A stretch of DNA of 64,000 nt from Octopus sinensis (Eukaryota): NCBI RefSeq assembly GCF_006345805.1, contig NC_043010.1, forward strand, positions 9,858,001 through 9,922,000, in the 5' to 3' direction. The translations under genes were made by a program, and so were the position numbers. Below, piece after piece: positions 16,960 through 59,507 of this stretch (positions are counted from its first letter, which is position 1; each line of letters begins with the position of its first letter). The notes under the pieces are model-generated. The model did no database searches, was not told the origin of the DNA, and was given only the letters and a program-made list of their open reading frames with translations.

Positions 16960-17298
16960 CGATACAAAGGGTAAAGGACCCCCTCAGTCATGAATGACCA
17001 CGGAATGTTATCCTCCGTGGTGCATATCCAGGGAAGGTCGTTTGTGGAAGGCCAGCAGTCACCCATTCATACCAGCCGCCCCTCTCCACACCACTGATGT
17101 TGTCCGAGGGAAAGGCAAAGGGGCTGCTACTGCTTGGCACCACTGACGTCACAATTGATTTCTACATCTGAGTGAACTGAAGCAACGTGAAATAAAGTAT
17201 CTTACTCAAGAACATGACACACATCTTGGTCTGGGAATTGAACTCACTACCACATGATTGTGACCCCAATGCTCTAATCACTGAGCCTTGTGCCTTCA
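16960..17298 (-). mobile_element. SINE with a family C-type head and a different tail
   Basis: The reverse complement begins gtgaaggcac..ggctcagtg..gagttcaattccc..atgttcttgagtaagatactttatttcacgttgc. Confidence 0.7.
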
Positions 17299-17349
17299 CT
17301 GATGATAAACTGCACTAAATTTTCACAATTATCATTTAATCCACGCTAC

Positions 17350-17518
17350 ATCATCATCGTTTAGCGTCCGCTTTCCATGCTAGCATGGGTTGGACGGTTT
17401 GACCGGGTAACTGGGAAGCCAGAAGGCTGCACCAGGCTCCGGTCTTATCTGGCAATGTTTCTACAGCTGGATGCCCTTCCTAACGCCAACCACTCCGTGA
17501 GTGTAGTGGGTGCTTTTT
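17350..17518 (-). mobile_element. Repeat family E 3' end with (GAT)n tail
   Basis: ggcgttaggaagggcatccagctgtagaaac...gacgctaaacgatgatg on the minus strand. Confidence 0.85.
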
Positions 17519-17591
17519 GAGGAAGCCGTTGCTTTCTGACAATGATGCAAAGCTCCGTTGTTGGAATGTAAATAACGAAAACAATGTCACA

Positions 17592-17925
17592 TTTTTAAAC
17601 TTGAGAAAAGTCTTGTATATTTTTACTATTCCCCTTACAGATTCTGTTTGTAATGTGTTAGTTAGTTGGTTGATTTCTTTTTCTAAAAATCTTAACTGAT
17701 TCAGATTGTCACTCAGGCATTTACTCACAAGACCAAGAGCACCAATTATTATTATTGGTATAAATATGAATTTATAATCTGGGTTCAGAAGCTGGAGGTT
17801 TCAAAGCAGTTCTCCATAGTTACTTCCTTTCTCTTAGATTTGTCAAAGAGTTATTCACATCAGCAAGACAACTGACCCTCTATGACAGTCCATACCTTTT
17901 CTTGTCTGTCCCAAATTACAATATT
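17592..17925 (-). pseudogene. Second RLE-domain C-terminal fragment (R4/NeSL-type LINE)
   Basis: IVIWDRQEKVWTVIE/VSCLADVN..EKE../LQLLNPDYKFIFIPIIIIGALGLVSKCL..LQTESVRGIVKIYKTFLKF, with frameshifts. Confidence 0.75.
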
Positions 17926-24507: not shown

Positions 24508-24932
24508 TATTAGATGCAAAAAATTGTCTGATGAAAATGATTGGCTTTCATAAACAGCAGGCTTTGACATAAAAATACCACTTACCACATGGTAATGACT
24601 TACAACCAAACATCAGTCAATCGCCCATCATGGTGCTTCAGAGAATGACATTTAAGCGAAAATACATCAAGAAAGTGACTGAAGCTCCTGGAGTGAGAGG
24701 AAAAGGAAGACACCAGTTCTCACAAAATTCTAATTAAAGCCCTGAAGCTTGGCCCAGGAAGATCATCAAGCTTCTTGTATCATTTAATGATAATTTGCTA
24801 ACAGAAGGTTTGCTAATCATGGAAAGATTTAACAATTGAATGAATGGTGGGAGTTGATGAAAGAATGGATTAGACAAGTCAGCATTTTTGATTCACCCCA
24901 CAGTATTTTTGGCATACAAGTCAATGTAGTAT

Positions 24933-25290
24933 AATCATCATCATCATCATCATCATCATTTAATGTCCGTTTTCCGCGCTAGCACGGGTTGGACGGTTCG
25001 ACCGGGTTCTGGGAAGCCAGAAGGCTGCACCAGGCTCCAGTCTGATCTGGCAGAGTTTCTACTGCTGGATGCCCTTCCTAACGCCAACCACTCCGAGAGT
25101 GTAGTGGGTGCTTTTTACGTGCCACCTGCACAGGTGCCAGGGGGGGGGTCCGGCATCGGCCACGATCGGTTGGAGCTTTTAACGTGCCACCGGCACGGAA
25201 GCCAGCCAAGGCGACGCTGGCAACGGCCACGTTCGGATGGTGCTTTTTATGTGCCACCGGCACAGGAGCCAGTCGGGGCGGCGCTGGCAT
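24933..25290 (-). mobile_element. Repeat family E with internal gtgccaccggca subrepeats
   Basis: Family E consensus with (GAT)n tail. Confidence 0.85.
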
Positions 25291-25541
25291 CGTAGTGTAA
25301 ATATGTATTGTAAGTATTCAAACATTATCACTGTCTTTCCAAATCCTTCAACATTTTACATGGAATCTTTGGTCTTTCAAAGTCATCTTGGTGTATAAGT
25401 TGACCTACCATTTTAAGTTCTAAAGTTTGGTCTAAAAAATCCAACTTGTATGCTGGAAATATGTTAAAAGTTTGAATCAGACATAACAGTCCAATAGAGA
25501 ATTACAGGAATGAAAATTCTATCTATTATATAGTGTGGCTT

Positions 25542-26075: not shown

Positions 26076-26175
26076 NNNNNNNNNNNNNNNNNNNNNNNNN
26101 NNNNNNNNNNNNNNNNNNNNNNNNNNNNNNNNNNNNNNNNNNNNNNNNNNNNNNNNNNNNNNNNNNNNNNNNNNN
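26076..26175. other. Assembly gap (100 N)
   Basis: Run of N; true size unknown. Confidence 1.
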
Positions 26176-27511: not shown

Positions 27512-27960
27512 TCAACCACCACAATAGCACCAACTGGGGAAGTAAGAACCCACATACCATGTTAATTTATCAGTTGTTATAGATAAGTTGTGACTTATCG
27601 CCAGAAGGATTAATTGGGCCGTTGCTTTTCGATGGTACAATGACAGATTCCATTTACTGGAAATTGCTCTGCCAATCTGTTGTGCCAAGCATTCAAGAGG
27701 ACTTTGAAGATGTGAAGTTTTATTTTCAGCAAGATGAGGCAGTCTCATACAACTGTTCTACAGTAAGGGCCTCTCTTGATCAGATTTTGGCAATCAGGTG
27801 AATTGAACTGAGGTTCAATGGAATATGCTTATTGTTCATCAGGCCAAGCACCAAAAACATTTTTTTTATGGAGATACTTAAAAGGTAAAGTTTGTTATAC
27901 AAAACTGACAATGGACAACAAACTGAGGGTAGTCATTGAATGAGAAAGAACACAAATACC
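26896..27960 (+). pseudogene. Tc1/mariner-type transposase pseudogene, split by a family E insertion
   Basis: First half ..HFLIKTVSIDEATF (WSDEATF-like); second half INHHN..W...[33 protein letters not shown]. Confidence 0.8.
27112..27510 (+). mobile_element. Family E 3' end with tail expanded to ~280 bp of (GAT/GGT)n
   Basis: ..ccgtccaacccatgcc..gatgttaaatgatgatg, followed by the long repeat. Confidence 0.85.
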
Positions 27961-28339
27961 AAATGTGATTCTAGTGTCACAAAACACCCAACAAGAACTC
28001 ACTACTTGAACAAAACTTGACTTAAACAAAACTTCCCTTAAACAGGATACGAATAATCCTATCAGGTGGTGCTATTAAGTTAGACATAGCCTGGACCAAT
28101 CTTTGGTCGAAACATATCTAAGTTTATCTAAGTACTTATTAGAGTTTGTAATGCGGTTGGTCTTATGAAAGGCATCCAACTGTAGAAGCCATGCCAAAGC
28201 AAATGATGAAGCTTGAATAAGTCTTTTGATTTGTTGGACTCTGTCAATTCATCGAGCGCATGTCCGCAAGGAAGACACATATTAAGTGATGTTGATGATG
28301 ATGATGATGGTGAGGAGGAGGATGAGCATGACACATATG

Positions 28340-28349
28340 CATATATATA

Positions 28350-28385
<36 letters not shown>

Positions 28386-28500
28386 CATATATATGCATGT
28401 ATATATATATCACACCCACATATAAATATATATTATATAATATATATATATCATTAATATAAATATATATTATTATTTATATATATATATATATATTATA

Positions 28501-38640: not shown

Positions 38641-39274
38641 AATGAATCTAAACAGAAAAAGGATAATAAAATAACACCCCCTAAAAAAGACAAAAACAAA
38701 ATAAAACAACCCTGCCCTACCAACTACCCCCCCCCCCCCCGAAAAAATATCATGATTTCCTGTAACATCAATGGAAGCTATTGTCAAAGAAATTTCAGAT
38801 ATTATCATGTTCGGAATTTTAAGAATTTTCAATTTCTGCGAAAACCAGAGACACACAGAGAGGGAAGGAGAGAGAAAGACAGAAAGAAGATGAGAGAGAG
38901 AAAGAGAAAGAGAGAGAGAGAGAGAGAGAGCTAGCAGAAAAAAAAAAATAATAATAAAGCGTAAAGAACAGAAAAGTGGAAAAAAAACAGAAAGAAAAGA
39001 ATAAGCTATCTTTAATTTAATAATATGAGATGCAAAACTCCAGCTAATGTCTTGACTACTTATGTTTTTAAGAAAACTCATTGAGCTCAGGGTTATCAAT
39101 TCATCATTGCTTAAACCGTGCTGGAATTGTGAGTTTAGCGACTGAACACAGCATTAAAAGAAAAAAATCATCTATTGGTTATGTTTGGTGTATAATAGTT
39201 GGTACTGAATTTTCTTGGAAGAATATATATAAAAAAAAAATTTTTTACTTAATAATTTACTGGATCATATTATA

Positions 39275-39853
39275 TCATCATCATCGTTTAACGTCTGCTT
39301 TCCATGCTAGCATGGGTTGGACGATTTGACTGAGGGCTGGCGAACCAGATGGCTGCACCAATCTCCAATCTGATCTGGCAGAGTTTCTACAGCTGGATGC
39401 CCTTCCTAACGCCAACCACTCCGAGAGTGTAGTGGATTCTTTTACGTGCCACCGGCATGAGGGCCAGCCAGGTGGTACTGGCAGTGGCCATGCTCAATGG
39501 TGCTTTTTATGTGCCTCCTGCACAGGAGACCGTCTGGCGGCACTGGCAACGACATCGTTCGAATGGTGCTTTTCCATGTGCTATCGGCATGGAGGCCAGT
39601 TAGCCACTCTGGCAATGATCACGCTTGTATGGCAGAATCGATAGCGCGCCGGGCGAAATGCTCAGCGGTATTTCGTCTGTCGTTACATTCTGAGTTCAAA
39701 TTCCGCCGAGGTCGACTTTGCTTTTAATCCTTTCAGGGTCGATAAATAAAGTACCAATTTCGCATTGGGGTCGATGTAATCGACTTAATCCGTGTGTCTG
39801 TCCTTGTTTATCCTCTCTGTGTTTATCCCCTTGTGGGTAGTAAAGAAATAGGT
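39275..39853. mobile_element. Family E (minus, 39275-39625) abutting SINE B (plus, 39628-39853)
   Basis: Both consensus sequences are recognisable. Confidence 0.85.
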
Positions 39854-39979
39854 ACTCTTAGTGCTCCATAAGCACAGATGCCAGGTCTTTGCAAGCAATC
39901 TCTCTATCTGTTGATCTATCAATCTACCTATTTGTTTGTCTGTCTGTCAGTCTATCTATCTATCTATCTGTCTCATCAT

Positions 39980-40220
39980 CATCATCATCATCATTTAACG
40001 TCTGTTTTCCATGCTGGCATGGGGTGGATGGTTTTAGAGGAGCTGGCCAACTGAAGAGCTGCCCAGGCAGCATGTCCCTTTTGGCATGGTTTATATAGGT
40101 GGATGCCCTTCCTCATGCCAAACACTTTACAGAATGCACTGGGTGGTGTTATGCAGCACAGGCATGGGTGGATTTTTGTGGTGCCAGTATGGGTGCTTTT
40201 TATGTGACACCACCACCCAC
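39980..40220 (-). mobile_element. Degenerate family E copy
   Basis: tcatcatttaacgtctgttttccatgctggc..ggatgcccttcc. Confidence 0.7.
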
Positions 40221-40406
40221 GAACCCACAAGATTAGGAATGCTCAGCTGGAGAAGGATGCCCAACTGCCAGGAGACTCAGTCCTCTATCATCCCCCTCTG
40301 TTGATTGTGGCCTGTTGGATTGTGAGCCCAATGCTTTACTCAGCCATGTGCCTTCACATATACATATATACACATATACACACTGAAACTAATGCATATA
40401 TGTATA

Positions 40407-43373: not shown

Positions 43374-44422
43374 GGGGTGGAGAGAGAAGGAGATGGGTAT
43401 GAAGATGAATATGCAGTAGTTATGCATGTGATGTATATACAAATCATATAAATGTTGACTTTTGGTCAGATAAAGAATAAAAATGTCACCATATAAAAGT
43501 ATATATTAGTTGTAAAATATTTGCTATTTAACAAATTAACTGCTTCCCTATTAACTATTTCTTGAGACAGATTTTGTAAAAGTTGACTTCAACAACTCCA
43601 CTGCCTCAGTTTTTACCACATTAAAGCCTATTCGATCTCATTCAATTTGTGCAAATTTATTAATATTAACTCTGCTAGCCCTCACATATTTAGCCCATAC
43701 TTTCCCAACTCTGCTATTTCTTTTTTATTGACTCAAATTCAAATATCTCATTTAATTAGTGCAAAATTCGTTGAGCTTAAACTCCATTAATGTTAACTCT
43801 GTTATACCTAATGTGTTTAGCTCATACTCTTCAAAACCATCGTGTGTCATCCACATATATCTTATTTTCCTAAACTATTGGCAATTGAATTTCACTACCA
43901 ATTTAGATTAACTAGCTGTCTCCAATTTTGTTTTTGTTTATTCTCCCTTTGCCTCGTCAACAGTCAGAATACATCAGTTCATCAAAATATCATCTGTATT
44001 TCTCTGAAGTGAAACCCTCTCTCTCTCTTTCGGAGAGGCACTGAGCAGCTATACGCACACATACACACACGGCAGTAACTTCCGCCTACCGAATTCAATC
44101 ACAAAGCTCCGGTCGGCTCAGGGCTATAGTAGAAGACACCTACCCAAAGTGCCACGCAGTGGGACTGAACCCAAAACCATGTAGTTAGGAAGCAAGCTCC
44201 CTAACCACATATATAAAAAATGAGAATCAGAAAATTTAGACACCACCCCCACATACACACACACACACACACATACACACACACACACACTTCTGTCTCT
44301 TGAATAGCTGTAAATATTTATCAAACATTAAACTAAGCAGATGAGCTTCTAAGTATAGGTTTGCTTTGATAAAGCTACATCATCTGGAAACCTGCTCCTC
44401 TATGTAATAAGACCCTGCTCTT

Positions 44423-44600
44423 GTGAAATTTGGCAAAAGCAATGATGCTGCACTCAAGATTAGCAAGGCATTTGACAATATCTGGCATTTGAACCATTTG
44501 GCAAAATCTCTCATCTTTTGGATTAGGGGTTTCCTGTCAAATCACACTAACATAGATTGTTCATATGGATCCCTTTTACAGTTACATTCATTTAAATCCT
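44423..44600 (+). pseudogene. Degraded LINE reverse-transcriptase fragment
   Basis: ALKISKAFDNIWH..LAK..WIRGFLSN resembles LD.SKAFD.VWH..LL.K...WI..FLS.R. Confidence 0.65.
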
Positions 44601-44702
44601 GCATGATCGAAGGTCTTCCCCTTCACCAAATGTCCTCCTTCAAATGCCTCAAAACATTGCAATAGAAGTCTCAATTGATGGTCTGACCATGGGGCATGAA
44701 TT

Positions 44703-44832: not shown

Positions 44833-45129
44833 TCTTCCCCTCAAACACATGCATGCACACACATACACACACAAATGCTCCTTTATATTAATAACCTACT
44901 TGTCTTTGTTCTAACTAATTTTCACTCCTATTCACATTTTTCATTTGGGTTCCATGCCTAAATACCACCTGTGTACACCCTGGACATCTCGCATCAAATC
45001 TGTCGTAACTCAATGAACACAGACCTCACAACATCGTCCAATGTTGTCCTGCTATAATTTTGTTTCCTTTGACAGTAGAAAAATCATATCAAGAAAGCAT
45101 TATTGCACTTTCAACCTCTAAAAATGACT

Positions 45130-45509
45130 AGCGCACAGCTAAAACTCCTTTTCAAACTCCGCCCGTCTAACACCCGTGGACATATTTACAAAGTCAGAAA
45201 ACAGCACAGCTCCCATGACTTTAGGAAACATTTTTTCACGCTGAGAGTTGCTGAAGCATGGAACAAACTGCCGGCATCGGTTGTTAATTGTCGGAGCACT
45301 GCATCCTTCAAAACTTCCATGCTTTCTGAGATTAGCCAACACTACACCTGATTTTTTCGCCTCCATACACACACAAGCATGTATCTGACTCATACATTGT
45401 TCGCTTTCCAGACATTTGAACATTACAGCATATACTCTATACGCACTTTCTGACAAGTTGTGGTGCACCTGAGCACTGTATACAATAATTTCATTATTAT
45501 TATTATTAA

Positions 45510-45560: not shown

Positions 45561-46072
45561 AATCCTTAATGGTCACTATAGAATCTTAAGCATTACCATT
45601 ACCAAGGATTTCTCTTTGTAAATGTACATTCTCAGTAAAGTGGCTGACTTCCTTCTCAAAAGTCACAAAATACTTTAGCCACAGCCACTACAATGCTTAG
45701 GTGAGACACACAACAAGTTCTCTTCCCACATCTAGAAGGGGGCTGCTGCTGTAACACATACAGACTTTCTTGACTGCATCCAATAAATGGCCATCTATCT
45801 GACTAGTATGATGTTGCACATGAACATACTGGCCAACAGATGCCCAGGCTCTTTCCCTAAATCAGTGCATCAAATATCTAGATGCTCCATGCATTTTCAA
45901 AAATGCCTTTAGATAATCCATATTAGTGTTTGAGCATTTTGAAAAACATTCAATATTTTTTTACACATAATGCAAATATGATTAACATGCATGTGTAGCT
46001 GTGTAGTTAAGAAGTTTGCTTTGCAATTGCATAGTTGTAGCTTCCATTCCAATGGTCAGGATTTGGGTGTGG

Positions 46073-46142
<70 letters not shown>

Positions 46143-46295
46143 GGTGAATGAATTATCCTATGTTTATCGTCAGCATGGAAAATTTGTTTAACCGAAACCT
46201 GGGTAGCAAATTCATGTCAGAAAACACGGTTGAAGCGACCTGTCCAAGGGTAGAAACTCCGGGTTCATGTGCAGAAATTTGTGTGTTGTATATGA

Positions 46296-46644
46296 ATAAA
46301 TGAAAGAATGGAGTCGAACGAAGATGTTAACAAAATTCCTTTACTCTCGACATATGTTTCGAAGACAACATGTTTTCATTCCAAAGGAATAAAGGGTGCA
46401 TTATGCAATCTTCTCATCAGGAAAGAAAGGGAGCCTCTCTCGACAACAAGACAAACAAAAATTTTGATGACTGCCTACATGGTAAATAAAACGATAATGA
46501 GTGTTTTTTAAAAAAAACGTTAGAAGAATTGACGTCAAATGCACCCTTTATTCCTTTGGAATGAAAACATGTTGTCTTCGAAACATATGTTGAGAGTAAA
46601 GGAATTTTGTTAACATCTTCGTTCGACTCCATTCTTTCATTTAT
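46296..46644. repeat. Inverted repeat, 107-bp arms, 135-bp spacer
   Basis: Arms 46296-46402 and 46538-46644 are identical except at 46349. Confidence 0.97.
46338..46430 (-). ncRNA. Type I hammerhead ribozyme, intact core (GUC)
   Basis: CCTTTCTTTC-CTGATGA-GAAGATTGCAT..ATGTTGTCTTC-GAAA-CATATG-TC-GAGAGTAAAGG. Stem I 10 bp with one bulge, stem II 10/11 bp, palindromic stem III ACATATGT; cleavage predicted at 46349/46348. Confidence 0.85.
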
Positions 46645-46852
46645 ATATATATATCTATATATATTATTATTATATTATTATTATTATTATTATTAATATC
46701 AGGAAATCAATATTAGAAAATTCTTCAGAAAGATATATACGTGTGTAAAATAATTGTTGTATTAAAAATATAGATATGTATAAAAATATTTATAAATATG
46801 TATAAGTATAAATATATAATGTATATGACAGTTTTGAATTAAGTTTTTAAAG

Positions 46853-46944
46853 CATCTTACGATCGTTTCACAGAAGTGCCGTCCCTATAATGAATTCCTA
46901 TATTGATAAGCATTTATAGACAACTCTTCTGCTCTTCAGAGATA
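46853..46944 (-). ncRNA. Type I hammerhead ribozyme, intact core (GUA)
   Basis: TATCT-CTGAAGA-GCAGAAG..CTTCTGT-GAAA-CGATCG-TA-AGATG. Stem II is 7 bp and extends further; palindromic stem III ACGATCGT; cleavage predicted at 46858/46857. Confidence 0.85.
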
Positions 46945-46989
46945 TAAAATTTGAATTTATACATATATATATATATAAGACAATCTTTC

Positions 46990-47390
46990 TGGTGGTGGAA
47001 AGCACTCATGACAGTTCCACTTAAAAGCACCTGAACAGTGACATGTAAAAGCACCTGTGCAGTGCCATGTAAAAGTGTCTATGTGGTGCCACATAAAAGT
47101 GCGTGTATGTAAAAGCATGTAAAAGCGACCATACGGCATCATGTAGAAGTTCCCATGTGGCATCATAATAAAAAAAACCATGTGGTGCCCCATAGAAGCA
47201 CCCATGCAGTATCAAATAAAAGCACCCAGCACACTCTGTAAAGTGGTTAGCACTAGGAAGAGAATCCAGCCATAGAAACCATGCCAAGCAGACTGAAGTC
47301 TGATGCAGCTCCCCTAGCTTGTCGGCTCTGGTCAAACCATCCAGCAAATGCCAGCATGGACAATGGATGTTAACTGATGATGATGATAAT
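46990..47390 (+). mobile_element. Diverged family E copy with gtaaaagc subrepeats and (GAT)n tail
   Basis: Family E consensus; lies between two hammerheads. Confidence 0.8.
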
Positions 47391-47417
47391 GATATATGTG
47401 CGTTTGTGTATGTGTGT

Positions 47418-47472
<55 letters not shown>

Positions 47473-47584
47473 TTAAGCAAAAATTTAGATTCAAATAAAT
47501 ATGGTACTTAATTTAGATGTACCAGAATTCTGTATGGTGTTATCCATAAAAATCTGTGGGGTGATTATAATCAAAATAAGCAAC

Positions 47585-47675
47585 AATTTGGTACGATCGT
47601 TTCGTACTACATCATTTTATTAAATGTTCTAAGTATTACAACAGATTTAAGATGCTGAGTACTCATCAGCCAATT
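47585..47675 (-). ncRNA. Type I hammerhead ribozyme, intact core (GUA)
   Basis: AATTGG-CTGATGA-GTACT..AGTAC-GAAA-CGATCG-TA-CCAAATT; palindromic stem III ACGATCGT; cleavage predicted at 47592/47591. Confidence 0.85.
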
Positions 47676-47792
47676 ATAGAGGTTTTCCATTAATATAAAA
47701 ATTTTCAAATCAAGTGGCAACATTATAGAGAAGGTAGATATACAGACAAAGATGTGGATTTATATATATATATATAACAAGAAGACAATGGA

Positions 47793-47899
47793 GGAAAAAT
47801 AACAAACAGAAGCGTATCTTTTGTACTAGTAAACCATTATTTGATTAGTAAATAAAGGCTTACTAGTGCAAAAGATACACTTCTGTTTGTTATTTTTCC
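47793..47899. repeat. 107-nt fold-back hairpin (~50-bp stem, 7-nt loop)
   Basis: Arms 47793-47832 and 47860-47899 differ at two positions; the spacer also pairs (ttattt/aaataa). Confidence 0.92.
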
Positions 47900-48157
47900 G
47901 CCCTTTCCCTCTCATCTATATAAATTAAACTACGGTTACCCACTAAATTACCTGCTGCCATATACCTTTTACCAAGAATATACCTACTGAGGTAATTTTC
48001 CAGAAGTATGTATATATGAATATATGCATGTATATATTTGCGTGTCTGTGTTTGTCCCCCACCATCGCTTGATTACTGATGTTGGTGTGTTTCCATCCCG
48101 ATAACTTAGTGGTTTGGCAAAAGAGACAGATAGAATAAGTACTAGGTTTACAAAAAA

Positions 48158-48570
48158 TATTACAGTTCTATATCTAAGAGATGAGGAATCATGTACATTA
48201 TTTACATTATTTACATTCAACAGATATTTGTCCTCATCTTGTTTGTTGTTAACACAACGTTTTGGCTGATATATCCTCCAGCTCATAACCACTACGCCAT
48301 ATGCCCAGGCATATGGCGTAGTGGTTAAGAGCGTGAGCTACTAACCCCAAGATTCCGAGTTCGATTCCAAGCAGTGACTTGAACAATAATAATAATAATA
48401 ATAATACTGATAATAATAACATCGAAAAATACCTTAGGAATGAGAACCCAGGTTCGAAATTTCCTCAAGACACCTGAAGAAGGCTGGAGGGTAATTCAGC
48501 CAAAATGTTGTGTCAACAACAAACAAGATGAGGACAAATATCCGTTGAATGTAAATAATGTAAATAATGT
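48158..48570 (+). mobile_element. Composite insertion: inverted partial copy + tRNA-like Pol III head + hammerhead-bearing tail
   Basis: A box TGGCGTAGTGG (48314) and B box GAGTTCGATTCC (48357), then (AAT)n and the tail; 48158-48282 is the reverse complement of the tail. Confidence 0.8.
48470..48513 (+). ncRNA. Degenerate minimal hammerhead motif
   Basis: ACAC-CTGAAGA-A-GGCTG..CAGCC-AAAA-TG-TT-GTGT; stems I and II are intact but GAAA is mutated to AAAA. Confidence 0.55.
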
Positions 48571-48738: not shown

Positions 48739-49050
48739 TGGAGGCGCAATGGCCCAGTGGTTAGGGCAGCGGTCTCGCGGTTGTAGGATTGTGGTATTGA
48801 TTCCCAGACCGGGCGTTGTGAGTGTTTATTGAGCGAAAACACCTAAAGCACCACGAAGCTCTGGCAGGGGGTGGTGGCAACCCCTGCTGTACTCTTTTGC
48901 CACAACTTTCTCTCACTCTTTCTTCTGTTGGCTTGCTCGCTTAGCCAGCAGGGTGGCGTCACTTGAAGGCTAAAACAATGCAAAGCGCATGGTGACCCGC
49001 GATGTGTAGCAACATCTGATAGCCTGGTCGGTCATGGTGATCACGGTGAT
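48739..49050 (+). mobile_element. SINE family D, tail variant 2
   Basis: Family D consensus. Confidence 0.9.
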
Positions 49051-49059
49051 ATATATATA

Positions 49060-49230
49060 TATCATCATCTTCATCATTATCGTTTAACGTCTGTTTTCCA
49101 TGCTGGCATGGGTTGGACAGTTCGACTGGGGTCTGGGAAGCCAAGAGACTGCACCAGGCTCCAGTCTGATCTGGCAGTGTTTCTACAGCTGGATGTCCTT
49201 CCTAACACCAACCACTCTGTGAGTGTAGTA
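49060..49230 (-). mobile_element. Family E 3' end
   Basis: Family E consensus. Confidence 0.85.
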
Positions 49231-49608
49231 AATATTTATATATTATAAAATATGCTATAGTATATATTGTATATATATTTTATAACAATATATGTTATAT
49301 AATATGTGTGTCTGTGTGTCTTTCTTTCTGTTTGTCATCATTACTGCTTGATGACTGGTGGTAGTTTGTTTTCCATCCCTATAACTTAAGTAGTTAAACA
49401 AATGAAACCAATTAAATAAGTTATTAAACAAGTCCCTTAACGCCTCGGGAGTTGTTGGGGGCACTGCAGCCATGCAGCCTATCTAGGGTATATTTGCTTG
49501 ACTAAAACACTTGTAGATGGTGCCCCAGCATGGCCTTAGTCCAATGACTGACAAGCAAAAGATAAAAATAATATAAACAAAAACAAAGCAAAAAAAAAAT
49601 GCTCTTAC

Positions 49609-49854: not shown

Positions 49855-50402
<548 letters not shown>

Positions 50403-50493
50403 TATATATGTAGATATTAGATCTTGCCACCCTTCTCATACAGAGAGAAATATACTATTCAACATGACAAGATCGATATGCTCAATAGTTACA

Positions 50494-51540
50494 GACACCA
50501 ACAGCTGAAGACAATCAGCGAATCTCAAGAGACTCCTAACAGAAGCAAGGTTCACATCAGGGAAGGAAATAATACAGGTAACAAACTGTGAAGACCCTTG
50601 TTGTGGGGGACATGTGAAATAATTGAACAAGAAACAACCAAATGGTTCAAGAATGGGAAAGATTTGAAAGTGAATATAAACACGAATTTCAAAGCAAAGT
50701 CTTGTCTACTGTATCATGTCCACTGTGCAATGAGAATTACATTGGAGAAACAGGGACTAAACTACAGGTTATACAGGTTACAAACTATGGAGACCCTTGC
50801 TGTTGAATATGCGATACTATTGAACGTGGAGGCGCAATGGCCCAGTGGTTAGGGCAGCGGACTCGCGGTCGTAGGATCGCGGTCGTAGGATCGCGGTTTC
50901 GATTCCTAGACCGGGCGTTGTGAGTGTTTATTGAGCGAAAACACCTAAAGCTCTACGAGGCTCCGGCAGGGGATGGTGGTGATCCCTGCTGTACTCTTTC
51001 ACCACAACTTTCTCTCACTCTTACTTCCTGTTTCTGTTGTACCTGTATTTCAAAGGGCCAGCCTTGTCACTCTCTGTGTCACACTGAATTTTCCCGAAAA
51101 CTACGTTAAGGGTAGTTCCATTGATCGGATCAACCGGAACCCTCATCGTCGTAACCGACGGAGTGCTTCTTCTTCACTATTGAACAAAGTACAACCAAAA
51201 GATTCAACAATGTGAAAGAATTGAAAGTAAATGTACACATAAATTACAAAGTAAAATATGTTGTCTTCTACGTCATATGCCCACAATGCAATGAGAATTA
51301 CATTGGAGAAACACGGACAAAACTAACCAATCTTGTAAACATGGATAAACAGAAAATTAAAGATTCCTCTCTTAGGAAAATGTTCCATGTGGTAATTCCA
51401 TGTGGTAAACATCTAGATGTTTGTGTAAGAGGAAAATTTAAAATATACCCCTTTAACAAAATAAATTATGAAAATGAACAACTATAAAAAAGGTAAAAGA
51501 ATACTGTATACGAATTCTAAATCCAAAACGAAACTGTTAA
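50494..51540 (+). pseudogene. Penelope-like element GIY-YIG endonuclease region, partially tandem-duplicated
   Basis: RQSANLKRLLTEARF..C.DPCCG/TCEIIE..FKNGK..CNENYIGETGTKL, then a second copy CD.IEQ..VVFYVICPQCNENYIGETRTKL..KHLDVC..FKIYPF..KEY.IR.LNP. Confidence 0.85.
50826..51175 (+). mobile_element. SINE family D, tail variant 1, inserted in the Penelope fragment
   Basis: 10-bp TSD actattgaac at 50816-50825 and 51176-51185. Confidence 0.92.
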
Positions 51541-52694
51541 ATAGTTGACACCATTAATAAAAACAACAATTTCTATATGCATTAGCCCAGAACACATGTG
51601 TTTGAAAAGTTGAATAACAAAAGCACTTGCACACAAAATACACACTAGACACAAAATATATGCTATGTGCAGACTTCTTCCACAAATGTTAGTGACATTC
51701 TGTTAAACAAAAAATTGTTCTAAATAGTTGCTAACTTTTTGAAAAGTCTTTTTAATATCATATATATACATATATATACACACACATACACACTCACATA
51801 TATAGATAGATAGATATAAATATTTATATATATACATACATATATATATATAAATATATATATACATATGTATATATATATATATACACACATATATATA
51901 TATGTATATACATACATATATATATGCAGTTTACACTTATGTTACTTTTGTGTGGAATTTTGTTTCCTCTCAGACATACCTTCTTTTTAACTGGCAGATT
52001 TTTTTTGAAATTTACACTTATAAGGTGACACTCCATAATAACATTTAATTGAACATTCCAGAAGGAATTGTAATTCATATTATATAAGAAGTGAACAATT
52101 CGTTTTTATGTCGGTTTCATAAATAAAATTCACAAGACTCTGAACCCTTGAGTCATTTTGTATCTTTCTGCTAATATGTATGCACACGCACGCACGTACA
52201 CACAGACACATAGATACACACACACTCACACGTGTATGAATGTGTGTGTGTGAGTTTATTCCTCCTTTTCTCTCTATGTACAAAGTAGAAAAACATATAA
52301 ATGATAACAAGTATAATAAATATATTTACATGTAAATTTGCATAGACAATTTACATAATGTTATGAAGTCCTCTCTTTACAGCTGTTTCGAATGATCAAA
52401 GGATTTTTGCCAACTGATCTACATCTGCTCTGGACTGTCTTACCCTGATGAAGAAGCTGGAGTATTGAATTCTGATCTTTCCGAGAATTTCGCGACTATT
52501 TATATAAGCATCTTATCTCTCATTAGTTTTATATATACATAGTGTATAGCAGAGCATTTATATTAATAAGCATTATTGTAACTGTAAGAGTAAATGATGT
52601 CTGTTTGCTAATCAATGCCTCAGAAAAAACTCAGGTTAGTGATGTATAGTAATAGCTGATGGTATTTTTAGTTATTACTTAGGATGATATTCTA

Positions 52695-53006
52695 TTGACT
52701 TTGAGAAAAAAATTATGTAACCACCTTTCTTCATTCCAAAATAAGGAAAAAATGAATTGTACAACTCTGAGTGGGTTCATCTGGACTTTTAATGATAATG
52801 CCACTAGTTATGATTATAAATGGGAATTTAATGATATTAGTAGGGCTTCACCATATACAATTGGAAACTCTAAGTGTAATCTATGCTGGGAAGAAATATT
52901 TCACATCTTTACCTCTAATTACAGGTTATTAATTCACAGAAATGAATTAGCTCTAAAATGGGCACATTCATTTAGAAAAGTATTAAAATACTTATCAAAT
53001 TTTTAA
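52695..53006 (+). pseudogene. C-terminus of a second, different Penelope-like endonuclease
   Basis: NHLSSF..NCTTLSGFIW..WE..ASPY..CNLCWEE..LL..RNEL..KWAH resembles H..SF..N.T.LS.YIW..W.I..A.PY..C.LC..EK..LLN.R.EL..KCRH. Confidence 0.65.
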
Positions 53007-54216: not shown

Positions 54217-54804
54217 AATTATACAAAATGCTTTTATTCCCTCGTGGGTTTTAGTATTTGGACTATAATCATACCAAGATACCATTTCCAGATGTTTTAA
54301 TTTTAATGACCAAAATGACAATGGTTTTAGACTTAAAGACAGAACTGCACTGCCCTTGTTTCTTGAAATCATAAAATAGCAATAGTAACAACAACAAAAA
54401 TATAAATCTATGAATTTGAATCAGAGCTGGATTGAGTGCAGCTCCTTAGAGAGAGCAGATATTGCATATCAACTAAATACATTGAACTGATAGGCAAAAA
54501 TGTATATATTTTTTAAAAATCAAAGCAGGTAATTCTTTGTTCTATGGATTATTAATTAATTATTAATGGAGCTATTCTGTGTAACAACCGTTATTATTGT
54601 TCAGAACACAGAAAAGAGTGGTTAAGTAGAGACACACACACACATACACACACATGCAAATGTATATATTTTATATGCATATATACAGACAGAGAGGAGA
54701 GAAGAAATAGCATGAGGAAAAAAGACTATGCTCTCTTTCTGTCTCCCCTTCTCTCCTTATCTTTCTCATCCACTCACTCACTCACTCACTCACTTACTTA
54801 CTCT

Positions 54805-54807
54805 CTG

Positions 54808-54839
<32 letters not shown>

Positions 54840-54913
54840 CACACACAGACGCACAGACACATTGAGAGAGAGAGAAGGAGAGCTTTCTGTCTTTCTTCCT
54901 TTCTATCTTTCTT

Positions 54914-54980
<67 letters not shown>

Positions 54981-55045
54981 GACGCACAAACACATTGAGA
55001 GAGAGAGAGAGAAGGAGAGCTTTCTGTCTTTCTTCCTTTCTATCT

Positions 55046-55113
<68 letters not shown>

Positions 55114-55194
55114 CACACACATAGACGCACATTGAGAGAGAGAGAGAGAGAGAGACAGAGAAAGAGAAAGATAGAAAGGAAGAAAGACAGAAAG
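54805..55194. repeat. ~140-bp tandem unit built from (CT)(TA)(CA)(GA) runs, with a terminal inverted core
   Basis: About 2.5 tandem copies; ctttctgtctttcttcctttctatct reappears inverted at ~55167-55194. Confidence 0.85.
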
Positions 55195-55825
55195 AAAGAG
55201 CATGATTAATAATGGAAAGTAAAGAGAGAAGTTAGTCATCACCAGATTAGCAGATAGTCCAAATTTTAGTCAATGGAAACATAGAGTAAAAGGCAGAGAG
55301 AGAGAGAGAGAGGAGTGGGGGTGGGGGAAAGCTTACTTACTCCAGATTAAACATAATAGATGGTGGAAAACAGGAAACAAGATGGCTGATGTAAGCGTTG
55401 CAAACAAACTCTTTTCTTTCAGAAATGTATGTTTTTTTTCAACTAGATATACCACAGTTGAGTTATGGCAACTCTTTTATAGTACCTTCTATCTAAATAT
55501 CACACGGAATATTTCTCCTAAACTTTAGAAATTTCAAATTGTATATATTCTACCTGTATTTCTCTGAAGCTTATATACAAAGTAAAACAGCTAAAACACT
55601 TGTTTACCTTTGCTTGATTTCTCTCTATTCCACGTTTTATATAATCATTGTCATCACCATCGCCGTCCTCATCATCATCGTCATCATCATCACCAATACC
55701 GCTACCACCTTCCCCATCTTACATTCATTAACACACATGCACATACAAATGCATACAGGACAACTAGCCAGGTATATTAAAGTTCAATATAGTACATCAT
55801 GTTAAACTCTGAAAATTCCCATATA

Positions 55826-57588: not shown

Positions 57589-58774
57589 GATGAGTTTCTT
57601 TTAGTTTCTGTCTACAAATCTACTCACAAGGCTTTGGTCGGCCCGAGGCTATAATAGAAGACACTTGCCCAAAGTGCCATGCAGTGGAAATGAACCCAGA
57701 ACCATGTGGTTGGTAAGTAAGCTACTTACCACACAGCCATATATATATATATATATATACATATTATTGGACACACATACACAATGTTTGTGCTTTACCA
57801 TTTTAACGTGGTGGAGGCAACCCACTCAAATCACTAAGTGTTAAAACACCTGAAAATCATAGTCATAGATAGGTGAGGCAACTCACCCCAAGTCCCATTC
57901 AGGAGTGATGGATATCAATATTTCACCATTTCTGTGGCATATCAACATCAAATACCTGAACCAAACTGGAGGTAAATTGAATAGCTTGTCCATGGCTATA
58001 TGAAAAATGATATAAAAACCACCTGCTGGTATGCCTGAAAAATGCTTACACAGGAATAAATTCAAATACGAATTAGAAGCTTTGTGCCTGTAGTAGAAAG
58101 GTTGTGAGCTGGCAGAATTGTCAACATGCCAAGGAAAATGCTTAGCAGTATTTTGTATATCGTTACATTCTGAGTTCAAATTCTGCTGAGATCAACTTTG
58201 CCTTTCATCCTTTTGGAGTTGTTAAACTAAGTACCAGTTGAGCACTAAGACTGATCATATAGACCCCACTGTTCAACTAGTACTTGTTTTCTTGACCCCG
58301 AAAGAATGAAAGGCAAAGTTAATCTTGGCAACATTTGAATTGAGAACATAAAGCCAGAAGCGATCCTGCTAAGTATTTTTGTGCAGTACACTATCAATTC
58401 TGCCAAATTGCTGCTTTACATAACATTATTATGTGGAGGCACAATGGCCCAGTGGTTAGGGCAGCGGACTCGCGGTCGTAGGATTGCGGTTTCAATTCCC
58501 AGACCGGGCGTTGTGAGTGTTTATTGAGCGAAAACACCTAAAAGCTCCACGATGCTCCGGCAGGGGGTGGTGATCCCTGCTGTACTCTTTCACCACAACT
58601 TTGTAACTGAATTATGGAAGTCCACCTGAAGATTGTCGATCAAGACAAGAAACGATTGTAGTGGCGGTTTTTTTGACTATTTATTAATTTTATGTATTGA
58701 TTAAGTTTCCTTGTTTGTTTTGCAAAATAGTGGTTTTGTCTCAAATAATATTTTATATATTATATAATATATAT

Positions 58775-58819
<45 letters not shown>

Positions 58820-59507
58820 ATATATATATATATATATACGATGAGTTTTTTTAGTTTCTGTCTACCAAATCTACTCACAAGGCTTTGGTCGGCCCGAGGC
58901 TATAATAGAAGACACTTGCCCAAAGTGCCATGCAGTGGAAATGAACCCAGAACCATGTGGTTGGTAAGTAAGCTACTTACCACACAGCCATATATATATA
59001 TATATATATATACATATTATTGGACACACATACACAATGTTTGTGCTTTACCATTTTAACGTGGTGGAGGCAACCCACTCAAATCACTAAGTGTTAAAAC
59101 ACCTGAAAATCATAGTCATAGATAGGTGAGGCAACTCACCCCAAGTCCCATTCAGGAGTGATGGATATCAATATTTCACCATTTCTGTGGCATATCAACA
59201 TCAAATACCTGAACCAAACTGGAGGTAAATTGAATAGCTTGTCCATGGCTATATGAAAAATGATATAAAAACCACCTGCTGGTATGCCTGAAAAATGCTT
59301 ACACAGGAATAAATTCAAATACGAATTAGAAGCTTGTGCCGTAGTAGAGAAAGGTTGTGAGCTGCAGAATTGTCAACATGCCAAGGAAAATGCTTAGCAG
59401 TATTTTGTATATCGTTACATTCTGAGTTCAAATTCTGCTGAGATCAACTTTGCCTTTCATCCTTTTGGAGTTGTTAAACTAAGTACCAGTTGAGCACTAA
59501 GACTGAT
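56716..59507. repeat. Complex local duplication: A ... B - inverted A - spacer - B'
   Basis: 58253-58602 is an apparently identical 350-bp reverse complement of 56716-57065; 58687-59507 is a near-identical direct copy of 57444-58255. Confidence 0.92.
58622..58664 (+). ncRNA. Minimal type I hammerhead ribozyme, intact core (GUA)
   Basis: CCAC-CTGAAGA-TTGTC-GATCAA-GACAA-GAAA-C-GATT-G-TA-GTGG; cleavage predicted after 58660. Confidence 0.8.

What the first reader, a model, noticed from the sequence alone, without database searches (positions are those of the whole stretch)
46338..47675. Three different intact hammerhead ribozymes in tandem on one strand within 1.35 kb
Seen: three type I hammerheads with complete CUGANGA and GAAA cores, valid stems and GUC/GUA sites, all on the minus strand. 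Their flanks are unrelated, so they are not copies of one satellite monomer. Known: Penelope-like elements and non-LTR retrozymes carry type I hammerheads, and the palindromic-stem-III forms can cleave as dimers. Inference: a minus-strand transcript would be cut at 47592, 46858 and 46349, releasing 734-nt and 509-nt RNAs that could be circularised like retrozyme RNAs. The two ACGAUCGU stems are mutually complementary, so these two non-identical ribozymes could activate each other as an intramolecular heterodimer.
Basis: partly seen in the sequence, partly recalled or inferred. Interest (0 to 1): 0.88.

Follow-up and report, generated by a model that had tools for sequence, protein, structure and literature searches.

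The report
Clustered Penelope-type hammerhead ribozyme relics
Three well-formed self-cleaving hammerhead RNA motifs really do sit within 1.35 kb on one strand, but they look like leftovers of three unrelated Penelope-like retroelement fragments in a repeat-rich stretch of an animal genome, not a cooperating ribozyme unit.

Summary
My own descriptor scan finds exactly three complete type I hammerheads in the 64 kb window. All are on the minus strand, at the stated cut sites (47592, 46858, 46349). About 0.003 hits per window are expected by chance. Rfam models miss them, probably because helix II is 53-63 nt long.

They belong to the known Penelope-like element (PLE) / animal retrozyme class: a 2 bp helix III with a palindromic tetraloop, a short helix I, and low GC.

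The proposed mechanism is mostly not supported:
- The three units share no sequence outside the core, so this is not a retrozyme tandem array.
- The 734-nt interval holds an unrelated SINE-like element and microsatellites.
- HH3 lies in a 114-nt, 97% identical inverted repeat, a head-to-head pair of copies as PLE insertions often form. On one transcript, that repeat would sequester HH3.
- A double hammerhead needs helix I formed across the two partners. HH1 and HH2 share helix III but have 0 bp of cross helix I. The same failure removes hammerhead-assisted circularisation.

A 5'-truncated PLE ORF remnant lies 2.7 kb away on the other strand.

Verdict: real motifs of a known kind, in a transposon nest. 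The long helix II is the only unusual trait.

The parts
47588..47677 (-). HH1, a type I hammerhead. Helix I 5' strand 47677-47670, CUGAUGA 47669-47663, long helix II hairpin 47662-47604 (59 nt), GAAA 47603-47600, helix III ACGAUCGU 47600-47593, A17 at 47592 (cut 47592/47591), helix I 3' strand 47591-47588 and beyond.
   Evidence: This is the weakest of the three: helix II z-score -1.3, and helix I/II pair probabilities <=0.14.
46853..46944 (-). HH2, a type I hammerhead. Helix I 5' strand 46944-46940, CUGAAGA 46939-46933, helix II 46932-46870 (63 nt, G.U at 10.1/11.1), GAAACGAUCGUA 46869-46858 (cut 46858/46857), helix I 3' strand 46857-46853.
   Evidence: helix II z-score -4.5, 0 of 200 shuffles fold as well; helix II pair probability 0.83-1.0, helix I <=0.07.
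46338..46431 (-). HH3, a type I hammerhead. Helix I 5' strand 46431-46421, CUGAUGA 46420-46414, helix II 46413-46361 (53 nt), GAAACAUAUGUC 46360-46349 (cut 46349/46348), helix I 3' strand 46348-46338.
   Evidence: own helix I duplex -9.6 kcal/mol; helix II z-score -2.6.
46289..46402 (-). Arm A of the inverted repeat. It is the 3' part of the HH3-bearing element: distal and 3' helix II, GAAA, helix III, the cut site and 60 nt of downstream tail. The CUGAUGA box and the helix I 5' strand lie outside the arm, in the spacer.
   Evidence: (114 nt, 97%).
46538..46651 (+). Arm B, a second, shorter copy of the same element's 3' end, in inverted orientation. It has no CUGAUGA box and carries GUU where arm A has GUC (U at about 46591). 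The two copies lie head-to-head with their 3' ends outward.
   Evidence: This arrangement is described for PLE insertions (PMC8557442). It was also seen in comparator locus L005.
47014..47397 (-). Unrelated SINE-like element lying between HH1 and HH2: an (ATC)n head, a conserved body, and a tail of 24-nt repeats (GTGCTTTTAC...).
   Evidence: at least 6 other copies in the window at 72-75% identity; alignment of 7 copies; 24-nt repeats at 47014-47226.
47419..47470 (.). (TC)n(TA)n microsatellite between HH1 and the SINE-like element. Further (TA)n tracts lie at 46073-46136, 46642-46699, 46958-46977 and 47761-47776.
   Evidence: These tracts are not specific to the cluster: the window holds 82 (TA)>=7 tracts.
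50347..51517 (+). 5'-truncated remnant of a canonical PLE ORF (RT C-terminal region plus C-terminal GIY-YIG endonuclease). It lies 2.7 kb from the cluster on the opposite strand, and no hammerhead was found in its 3' UTR. It is context, not part of the three motifs.
   Evidence: 114 homologues; the long homologues carry RVT_1 plus a C-terminal GIY-YIG; tblastn maps matches only to 50347-50803 and 51155-51517.

Best explanation
The three motifs are genuine type I hammerhead ribozyme sequences of the PLE / animal-retrozyme class. Each sits in a different short fragment, roughly 260-360 nt between flanking simple repeats. Each fragment is most likely the truncated 3' end or pseudo-LTR of a PLE, or a PLE-mobilised non-autonomous element. 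At least two, and probably three, source families are represented.

The fragments accumulated side by side in a stretch rich in SINEs, MITEs and microsatellites. HH3 came in as a head-to-head pair of copies. That is what PLE insertion produces when both target strands prime reverse transcription.

The cores are intact because they were copied from source elements whose hammerheads are under selection, not because this locus is. In the source elements the ribozyme is thought to process multimeric element RNA. That role is inferred from the literature and is still debated.

At this locus the motifs do not form a cooperative unit:
- Helix III is too weak for robust monomer folding.
- No compatible dimer partner lies in cis.
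- HH3 would be sequestered by its inverted repeat.

Shown here: the motifs, their non-randomness, their non-homology, the inverted copy, the SINE insertion, the PLE ORF remnant nearby, and the helix I incompatibility. Inferred: a PLE origin for each fragment, independent insertion, and low activity.
For: - The motifs are complete and far beyond chance.
- Helix III is A-U and C-G closing a palindromic tetraloop (GAUC or AUAU). describes exactly this as typical of metazoan type I hammerheads. describes 2 bp plus a tetraloop as the invertebrate retrozyme form.
- Helix I is 4-5 bp and proximal helix II is 5-7 bp, matching the PLE trend of 'short helix I, larger helix II'.
- There is no similarity between the units outside the core. 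Cervera and de la Pena report extreme sequence variability of PLE hammerheads within a genome.
- HH3 has an inverted, shorter second copy with 3' ends outward. Dual hammerheads 100-700 bp apart on opposite strands, adjacent inverted 5'-truncated copies and nicking and extension of both strands are all reported for PLEs.
- Comparator locus L005 shows a head-to-head PLE pair.
- A PLE RT/GIY-YIG remnant is in the window.
- Mollusc PLE loci carry CUGAAGA...GAAACGCGUA hammerheads 95-110 nt after the ORF stop. This is very close to HH2's CUGAAGA...GAAACGAUCGUA, apart from helix II length.
- The arms of the HH3 repeat are 97% identical, so that insertion is not ancient.
Against: - No PLE ORF or recognisable pseudo-LTR adjoins any of the three motifs. 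The only PLE ORF remnant is 2.7 kb away, on the other strand, and has no hammerhead of its own.
- No other copy of any of the three fragments could be found, so no family consensus exists. The window has none apart from the repeat, one metagenome scan found none, and one protein-space search found none.
- Helix II is 53-63 nt. The three sampled PLE hammerheads have 7-14 nt.
- Three motifs within 1.35 kb on one strand is not what uniform scattering of three hits over 64 kb predicts (about 3e-4 by simple arithmetic). Some coupling, such as a hot spot, homing or a composite element, is therefore needed but not demonstrated.
- (TA)n flanks do not discriminate, because (TA)n tracts occur every ~780 bp in this window.
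Confidence: 0.62

Rival explanations
1. A minus-strand transcript is cut at all three sites, with HH1 and HH2 activating each other as an intramolecular heterodimer. The 734- and 509-nt products are then circularised like retrozyme RNAs.
For: - All three cores are intact and co-oriented.
- HH1 and HH2 share an identical palindrome, ACGAUCGU, whose duplex is -10 kcal/mol.
- Any RNA bounded by two hammerhead cuts carries ligatable ends. This rests on established hammerhead chemistry and the review read.
Against: - Cross helix I is 0 bp in both combinations, so neither active site of a double hammerhead can close.
- The same incompatibility stops the termini of either product from rebuilding a hammerhead for ligation.
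- The intervals are made of an unrelated SINE-like element and microsatellites or of the inverted-repeat hairpin (z-score -12), which drives the HH3 helix probabilities to 0.
- The units are not homologous, so the defining tandem repeat of a retrozyme is missing.
Confidence: 0.05
2. The cluster is the decayed remnant of one old tandem array, a single retrozyme or PLE pseudo-LTR family. The bodies have diverged beyond recognition and only the hammerheads have been kept by selection.
For: - HH1 and HH2 share the identical 12-mer GAAACGAUCGUA.
- Their core-to-cut lengths are nearly the same, 78 and 82 nt.
- With the SINE-like element and microsatellites removed, they would lie roughly 260 nt apart, inside the 150-450 nt retrozyme range.
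Against: - No residual similarity remains in helix II or in either flank (z-scores from -0.7 to 1.4).
- Keeping 12 of 12 core and helix III bases identical while everything else randomises would need strong purifying selection on a non-mobile genomic copy. There is no evidence for that.
- HH3 has a different helix III and its own inverted-copy structure.
Confidence: 0.1
3. The HH3 unit (46289-46651) is a foldback or MITE-type DNA transposon with 114-bp terminal inverted repeats that happens to carry a hammerhead. It is not a twin-primed PLE insertion.
For: - It has long, nearly perfect terminal inverted repeats in a 363-bp unit with TA-rich flanks.
- Other palindromic MITE-like units lie next door, at 47780-47912 and 48195-48570.
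Against: - No second copy and no clear target-site duplication could be defined in the TA-rich flanks.
- The hammerhead straddles the arm/spacer boundary. That fits two unequal truncated copies of one oriented element better than symmetric terminal repeats.
- Inverted truncated copies are a documented PLE signature.
Confidence: 0.1
4. The motifs are chance matches to a loose hammerhead descriptor.
For: No Rfam hammerhead model scores them, even at E<=10. Thermodynamic folding gives low probability to some of the helices.
Against: - Expected counts are 0.0025-0.004 per window, against 3 observed.
- Chance core matches in 596 Gb of prokaryotic DNA never carry the helices.
- Each helix I is specific to its own partner strand.
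- Two of the three helix II hairpins are significantly stable.
- Rfam also misses the compact hammerhead-like motif at 58626, so the models do not appear to cover this class.
Confidence: 0.01

Closest known systems
Minimal and variant type I hammerheads in pseudo-LTRs of Penelope-like elements (Cervera and de la Pena 2014, PMC4209133; Lunse et al. 2017, cited but not read)
   Same: - Type I topology with a CUGANGA/GAAA core.
- Palindromic helix III that implies dimer-dependent activity.
- Short helix I (4-5 bp) and a proximal helix II longer than the canonical 4 bp.
- Mostly dispersed solo copies with extreme sequence variability.
- Pairs on opposite strands 100-700 bp apart.
- Mollusc PLE loci sampled here carry CUGAAGA...GAAACGCGUA.
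   Different: - Helix II is 53-63 nt here, against 7-14 nt in the sampled PLE loci.
- Helix III carries a 4-nt palindromic insert (ACG-AU-CGU / ACA-UA-UGU), not the loop-less ACGU/ACGCGU.
[quoted passage not shown]
- No adjoining RT/GIY-YIG ORF.
Animal non-LTR retrozymes (Cervera and de la Pena 2020, PMC7229834; Li et al. 2026 preprint, 10.64898/2026.07.22.740005)
   Same: - Type I hammerhead with a 2 bp helix III plus tetraloop.
- Low GC (32% here).
- Unit sizes of a few hundred nt.
- Linked to PLEs.
- Monomeric derivatives are dispersed in genomes.
   Different: - Retrozymes are tandem repeats of one homologous unit, whose termini rebuild a single hammerhead. Here the three units are unrelated, and their helix I strands are not cross-compatible.
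- The intervals contain foreign repeats.
Double-hammerhead (dimeric) cleavage in newt satellite and ASBVd RNAs (Forster et al. 1988, as reviewed in PMC6466107)
   Same: A weak monomeric helix III with a palindromic loop that can merge into an extended intermolecular helix III.
   Different: Known cases are homodimers of identical tandem copies, so helix I forms across the copies automatically. HH1 and HH2 cannot do this.
'HHR_half_core' cases in Naiad PLE 3' UTRs (Craig et al. 2021, PMC8557442)
   Same: CUGANGA and GAAA boxes separated by an unusually long spacer (35-50 nt) in invertebrate PLEs. Naiads show (TA)n insertion bias and complex tandem/inverted insertions.
   Different: - Those cases were reported as not fitting any stem-loop descriptor. 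Here all three helices are present.
- The spacers here are longer, at 53-63 nt.
- No Naiad (N-terminal endonuclease) ORF was found in the window. The remnant present is of the C-terminal endonuclease type.

Membership tests
Hammerhead ribozyme, type I | Conserved core: C3 U4 G5 A6 N7 G8 A9, G12 A13 A14, the A15.1-U16.1 pair, and H17 (not G) at the cleavage site | tested here: met
   All three have zero core mismatches. The cleavage triplets are GUA, GUA and GUC.
Hammerhead ribozyme, type I | Three helices around the core, with helix I open and helices II and III closed | tested here: met
   - Helix I is 4, 5 and 5 bp contiguous, and specific to its own partner strand.
- Helix II is closed by hairpins of 59, 63 and 53 nt.
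- Helix III is 2 bp plus a palindromic tetraloop. It is thermodynamically negligible as a monomer.
Hammerhead ribozyme, type I | G10.1-C11.1 closing pair of helix II | tested here: inconclusive
   Present in HH1 and HH3. HH2 has G.U instead.
Hammerhead ribozyme, type I | Match to the curated covariance models (Rfam Hammerhead_1 and relatives) | tested here: not met
   No hammerhead hit at gathering score or at E<=10 with lax filters. The models also miss the compact hammerhead-like motif at 58626.
Hammerhead ribozyme, type I | Site-specific self-cleavage | not testable with these tools
   This needs in vitro transcription and cleavage assays.
PLE pseudo-LTR hammerhead | Located in the repeat flanking an RT plus GIY-YIG ORF | tested here: not met
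   tblastn with 231 PLE proteins maps matches only to 50347-51517 on the plus strand. Nothing lies next to the cluster. Most PLE hammerheads are solo remnants in any case.
PLE pseudo-LTR hammerhead | Palindromic positions 15.2-16.2 and loop 3 (dimer-type helix III) | tested here: met
   ACGAUCGU occurs twice and ACAUAUGU once.
PLE pseudo-LTR hammerhead | [quoted passage not shown] | tested here: not met
   Helix II starts directly after A9 in all three.
PLE pseudo-LTR hammerhead | Insertion architecture: 5' truncation with an adjacent inverted truncated copy | tested here: inconclusive
   Met for HH3. No second copy is available to define the ends of the HH1 and HH2 fragments.
Animal non-LTR retrozyme | Tandem repeats (two or more) of one homologous unit of 150-450 bp (up to ~970 bp), each with a type I hammerhead | tested here: not met
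   No similarity between the units outside the core. The intervals of 734 and 509 nt hold a SINE-like element, microsatellites and an inverted arm.
Animal non-LTR retrozyme | The termini of the excised monomer rebuild one hammerhead (own helix I), which aids ligation to a circle | tested here: not met
   Cross helix I between neighbouring motifs is 0-1 bp.
Animal non-LTR retrozyme | Expressed as small circular RNAs | not testable with these tools
   No expression data are available here.
Double-hammerhead heterodimer (HH1 x HH2) | Helix III strands mutually complementary | tested here: met
   The 8-bp duplex is -10 kcal/mol.
Double-hammerhead heterodimer (HH1 x HH2) | Helix I formed between the 5' strand of one partner and the 3' strand of the other | tested here: not met
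   There are 0 contiguous pairs from the junction in both combinations. The best duplex anywhere is -0.9 or 0.0 kcal/mol. The topological requirement follows from strand continuity in the standard hammerhead numbering.

The most novel reading that the evidence does not exclude
The three motifs may define an undescribed architectural class of type I hammerhead. It would have a 53-63 nt helix II, a 2 bp helix III with a palindromic tetraloop, and a 4-5 bp helix I. It would be carried by a lineage of PLEs or PLE-dependent short elements that standard descriptors and Rfam models miss.

If so, PLE clades now called 'hammerhead-less' or 'half-core' (for example Naiads, which have 35-50 nt between the two core boxes) may in fact carry functional long-helix-II hammerheads. 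The long helix II could then serve a second role, such as protein binding.
Probability: 0.2. Interest if true: 0.5.

Novelty: new member of a known kind. Interest (0 to 1): 0.25.

Why it matters
The value is modest.
- It adds three clean examples of PLE/retrozyme-class hammerheads that the curated covariance models do not report. Hammerhead censuses in invertebrate genomes may therefore undercount motifs with long helix II insertions.
- It supplies a simple rule for judging 'cooperating' hammerhead clusters: a shared palindromic helix III is not enough, because helix I must also be cross-compatible.
- If the long helix II proves to be a family trait tied to a PLE lineage, it would bear on the open question of which PLE clades really lack ribozymes and what the ribozyme does for the element.

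Tried and rejected
- Rfam at gathering score over the whole window, and at E<=10 over 45800-48200 and 58300-59000, gave no hammerhead hit. The sub-threshold miRNA hits at 47780-47914 only reflect a palindromic hairpin.
- Local and global alignments looking for shared flanks found only microsatellites.
- I first thought the fragments were specifically bounded by (TA)n tracts, as a PLE target. I dropped this as evidence once I counted 82 (TA)>=7 tracts in 64 kb.
- Pfam on 30 ORFs gave nothing usable. The TRAP_alpha and RasGAP_C hits are low-complexity noise.
- The exact-protein look-up of a low-complexity ORF found nothing.
- The antisense ORF of the HH3 arm has no homologue in protein space.
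- The word-indexed search with the endonuclease-like ORF found nothing. The exhaustive HMMER search then found 114 hits.
- A metagenome scan for the HH3 22-mer gave 0 matches. A metagenome scan for the closest full-length PLE protein gave 0 confirmed loci.
- The cluster look-up gave no organism names, so the host is not identified. My impression of a cephalopod-like genome is from memory only.
- The supplement of PMC8557442 is not held. Lunse 2017 and Arkhipova 2017 are not held.
- No hammerhead was found downstream of the window's PLE ORF remnant.
- There are no tRNA genes in the window.
Full report
**Observation**

Reading the minus strand and scanning both strands of the window with my own descriptor returns exactly three hits. 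The descriptor requires CUGANGA, helix II >=4 bp, GAAA within 90 nt, A15.1-U16.1 with helix III >=3 pairs, H17, and helix I >=4 bp. All have perfect cores (GUA, GUA, GUC). Helix I is 4, 5 and 5 bp contiguous, or 8 and 10 bp with one bulge in HH1 and HH3. Helix II closes in every case.

Several controls show this is not chance:
- 400 dinucleotide shuffles give 0.0025 hits per window.
- 3600 permuted decoy cores scanned on the real sequence give a mean of 0.004 hits.
- Allowing one core mismatch adds nothing.
- The bare core pattern occurs 73 times in 596 Gb of prokaryotic DNA, close to the ~50 I expect by chance. None of the 46 matches I re-examined has even 3 bp in both helix I and helix II.
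- Each helix I strand pairs only with its own partner strand.

Rfam reports no hammerhead, either at gathering score or at E<=10. It also misses a compact hammerhead-like motif elsewhere in the window. I read this as a coverage gap for minimal-helix-III, long-helix-II forms, not as evidence against the motifs.

**Anatomy**

Helix III is the same design in all three: A15.1-U16.1 and C15.2-G16.2 closing a palindromic tetraloop. The sequence is ACGAUCGU in HH1 and HH2, and ACAUAUGU in HH3. Cervera and de la Pena describe this as the usual metazoan type I helix III. The retrozyme paper describes 2 bp plus a tetraloop as the invertebrate form.

The unusual trait is helix II, at 59, 63 and 53 nt. 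Each folds as a single imperfect hairpin with paired ends, with z-scores of -1.3, -4.5 and -2.6. HH2 has G.U at 10.1/11.1.

Outside the cores, the three units share no detectable similarity in helix II or in either flank.

**Surroundings**

The window is 36% GC (32% around the cluster). It is full of microsatellites, with 82 (TA)>=7 tracts. It has no tRNA genes and no intact protein domains in its long ORFs.

Between HH1 and HH2 lies a 384-nt SINE-like element at 47014-47397, in minus sense. It has an (ATC)n head and a tail of 24-nt repeats. At least six other copies occur in the window. Next to it are (TC)n(TA)n tracts. The 734-nt interval is therefore a composite.

HH3 lies in an inverted repeat with arms at 46289-46402 and 46538-46651, 97% identical. 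The plus-strand arm is a second, shorter copy of the same element's 3' end. It lacks the CUGAUGA box and reads GUU at the cleavage triplet. The two copies lie head-to-head with their 3' ends outward.

**Link to Penelope-like elements (PLEs)**

An ORF fragment at 51155-51484 (+) looked to me like a GIY-x-C-x2-C-YIG endonuclease. Pfam and the word-indexed search found nothing. The exhaustive HMMER search gave 114 homologues, and the long ones carry RVT_1 plus a C-terminal GIY-YIG. That is the canonical EN+ PLE architecture.

tblastn with 231 such proteins maps PLE coding remnants only to 50347-50803 and 51155-51517 on the plus strand. So a 5'-truncated PLE lies 2.7 kb from the cluster. It is on the other strand, and no hammerhead is visible in its 3' UTR.

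In related mollusc PLE loci fetched for comparison, hammerheads lie 95-110 nt after the ORF stop in L004 and L005, and 1.4 kb after it in L001. They read CUGAAGA, a helix II of 7-14 nt, then GAAACGCGUA/U or GAAAACGUUU. This is the same core flavour and palindromic helix III as HH1 and HH2, but compact. L005 also shows a head-to-head PLE pair.

The literature adds further points:
- PLE insertions are strongly 5'-truncated, form partial tandems, and often have an adjacent inverted truncated copy.
- An anole PLE protein nicks AT-rich DNA and extends both strands. Reverse transcription starts about 85-90 nt downstream of the hammerhead cut.
- Dual hammerheads 100-700 bp apart on opposite strands are common.

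HH3, with 60 nt from the cut to the shared 3' end and an inverted partner, fits this pattern well.

In a double hammerhead the merged helix III pairs the 15.x strand of copy A with the 16.x strand of copy B. By strand continuity, H17 and nucleotide 1.1 of B enter the junction built by A's core. Helix I must therefore form between A's 5' strand and B's 3' strand. Identical tandem copies satisfy this automatically.

For HH1 and HH2 the shared ACGAUCGU duplex is good, at -10 kcal/mol. Cross helix I is 0 bp from the junction in both combinations. The heterodimer is therefore not supported.

The same test bears on circularisation. A retrozyme monomer's two ends rebuild one hammerhead. Here the ends of the 734- and 509-nt pieces would come from different motifs with non-complementary helix I strands.

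Folding gives further reasons for doubt:
- The 509-nt piece folds into the inverted-repeat hairpin: -134 kcal/mol against -78.9 +/- 4.6 for shuffles, z-score -12.
- With >=100 nt of context, the probabilities of HH3's helices I and II fall from 0.95 and 0.5 to 0.
- HH1's helices are poorly populated even in isolation (<=0.14).
- HH2 has a solid helix II but a weak helix I.
- Helix III is about 0 as a monomer in all three.

These are nearest-neighbour predictions that ignore tertiary contacts, so monomer cleavage is not excluded. Invertebrate retrozyme hammerheads with the same helix III do cleave as monomers.

**What it most likely is**

The cluster is most likely three solo hammerhead-bearing fragments of PLEs, or of PLE-mobilised non-autonomous elements, from different families. 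They sit nested side by side in a transposon-rich stretch. Their cores are intact because they were copied from source elements that are under selection.

The clustering itself is not explained by uniform scatter. Three hits within 1.32 kb of 64 kb, all on one strand, has a probability of roughly 3e-4 by simple arithmetic, and this estimate is post hoc. PLE endonuclease preference for AT-rich DNA and for PLE sequences themselves is a plausible cause but is not shown here. I first thought the (TA)n flanks supported a hot spot. I withdrew that, because (TA)n tracts are everywhere in this window.

**Comparison and novelty**

The motifs pass the sequence-level definition of a type I hammerhead and share the PLE/retrozyme helix III.

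They fail the retrozyme definition:
- There is no homologous tandem unit.
- The termini are not compatible.

They fail two PLE-hammerhead traits:
- No adjoining ORF or pseudo-LTR could be shown.

The long helix II is the one feature I could not match to anything I read. Craig et al. mention eight Naiad 3' UTRs with the two core boxes 35-50 nt apart that fitted no descriptor. I could not fetch those sequences.

I file the finding as new members of a known kind. There is a 0.2 chance that it marks an undescribed long-helix-II variant class.

**Limits**
- The host organism was not identified.
- No other genomic copy of any fragment could be retrieved.
- Neither transcription nor cleavage can be tested with these tools.

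Noticed in passing
window 50347-50803 and 51155-51517 (+): 5'-truncated remnant of a canonical Penelope-like element ORF (RT C-terminal region plus C-terminal GIY-YIG endonuclease). Pfam and the word-indexed protein search both missed it. Only the exhaustive HMMER search found it (114 hits; the long ones carry RVT_1 plus GIY-YIG). Its 3' UTR (51486 to about 51750) has an AC-rich stretch and ends in a microsatellite, but no hammerhead.
   Followed up: yes
window 58626-58660 (+): Compact hammerhead-like motif: CUGAAGA, a 5-bp helix II with a 6-nt loop, GAAACGAUUGUA|G (one mismatch from the HH1/HH2 12-mer), and a 4-bp helix I. It has U10.1-A11.1 and a non-palindromic loop 3. It may be a decayed PLE hammerhead. 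Rfam does not report it.
   Followed up: partly
window 47014-47397 (-), with other copies near 17270-17770, 24860-25360, 27950-28450, 39200-39700, 39900-40400 and 48980-49480: Abundant SINE-like family with an (ATC)n head, a conserved ~180-nt body (...GGATGCCCTTCCTAACGCCAACCAC...) and a tail of 24-nt GTGCTTTTAC-type repeats. Copies are 72-75% identical. No paper in the library contains the consensus string.
   Followed up: partly
window 47780-47912: Near-perfect 133-nt palindromic hairpin (63-nt arms, 7-nt loop). It gives spurious sub-threshold hits to plant miRNA models (MIR860 at E=2.9e-12, below gathering score). It is probably a MITE or foldback unit.
   Followed up: no
window 48195-48282 / 48483-48570: Second long inverted repeat (88-nt arms, 93% identical, 200 nt apart). 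By eye, the spacer holds a pair of inverted tRNA-like SINE heads. ARAGORN finds no tRNA.
   Followed up: no
window 52683-53003 (+): ORF fragment (...TTLSGFIW...SKCNLCWEE...LIHRNELALKW...) that, from memory only, resembles a family of stand-alone GIY-YIG proteins common in invertebrate genomes. Pfam gives no hit.
   Followed up: no
window 44411-44662 and 45079-45348 (+): ORF fragments that by eye look like the RT and the C-terminal tail of a CR1/jockey-like LINE, about 700 nt from HH3. Pfam gives no hit.
   Followed up: no
window 26076-26175: Run of 100 N, an assembly gap.
   Followed up: no
whole window: Extreme microsatellite load: 82 (TA)>=7 tracts in 64 kb, about one per 780 bp. Many long 'ORFs' are translated simple repeats, for example 133-1458 and 54556-55209.
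   Followed up: yes
L005 1145-3277 (-) and 3501-5672 (+); L004 5451-5474; L005 5767-5797; L001 7245-7271: In mollusc-type PLE loci fetched as comparators, two full ORFs lie head-to-head 224 nt apart. Compact CUGAAGA...GAAACGCGU(A/U) hammerheads sit 95-110 nt after the ORF stop in L004 and L005. In L001 a compact CUGAAGA...GAAAACGUUU hammerhead lies 1.4 kb after the stop.
   Followed up: partly
Protein hits P0121, P0134, P0137, P0191, P0195, P0203, P0230: PLE RT/GIY-YIG proteins that are deposited under bacterial symbiont names (Solemya velum gill symbiont, Candidatus Thiodiazotropha). They are most likely bivalve host DNA binned into symbiont assemblies.
   Followed up: no
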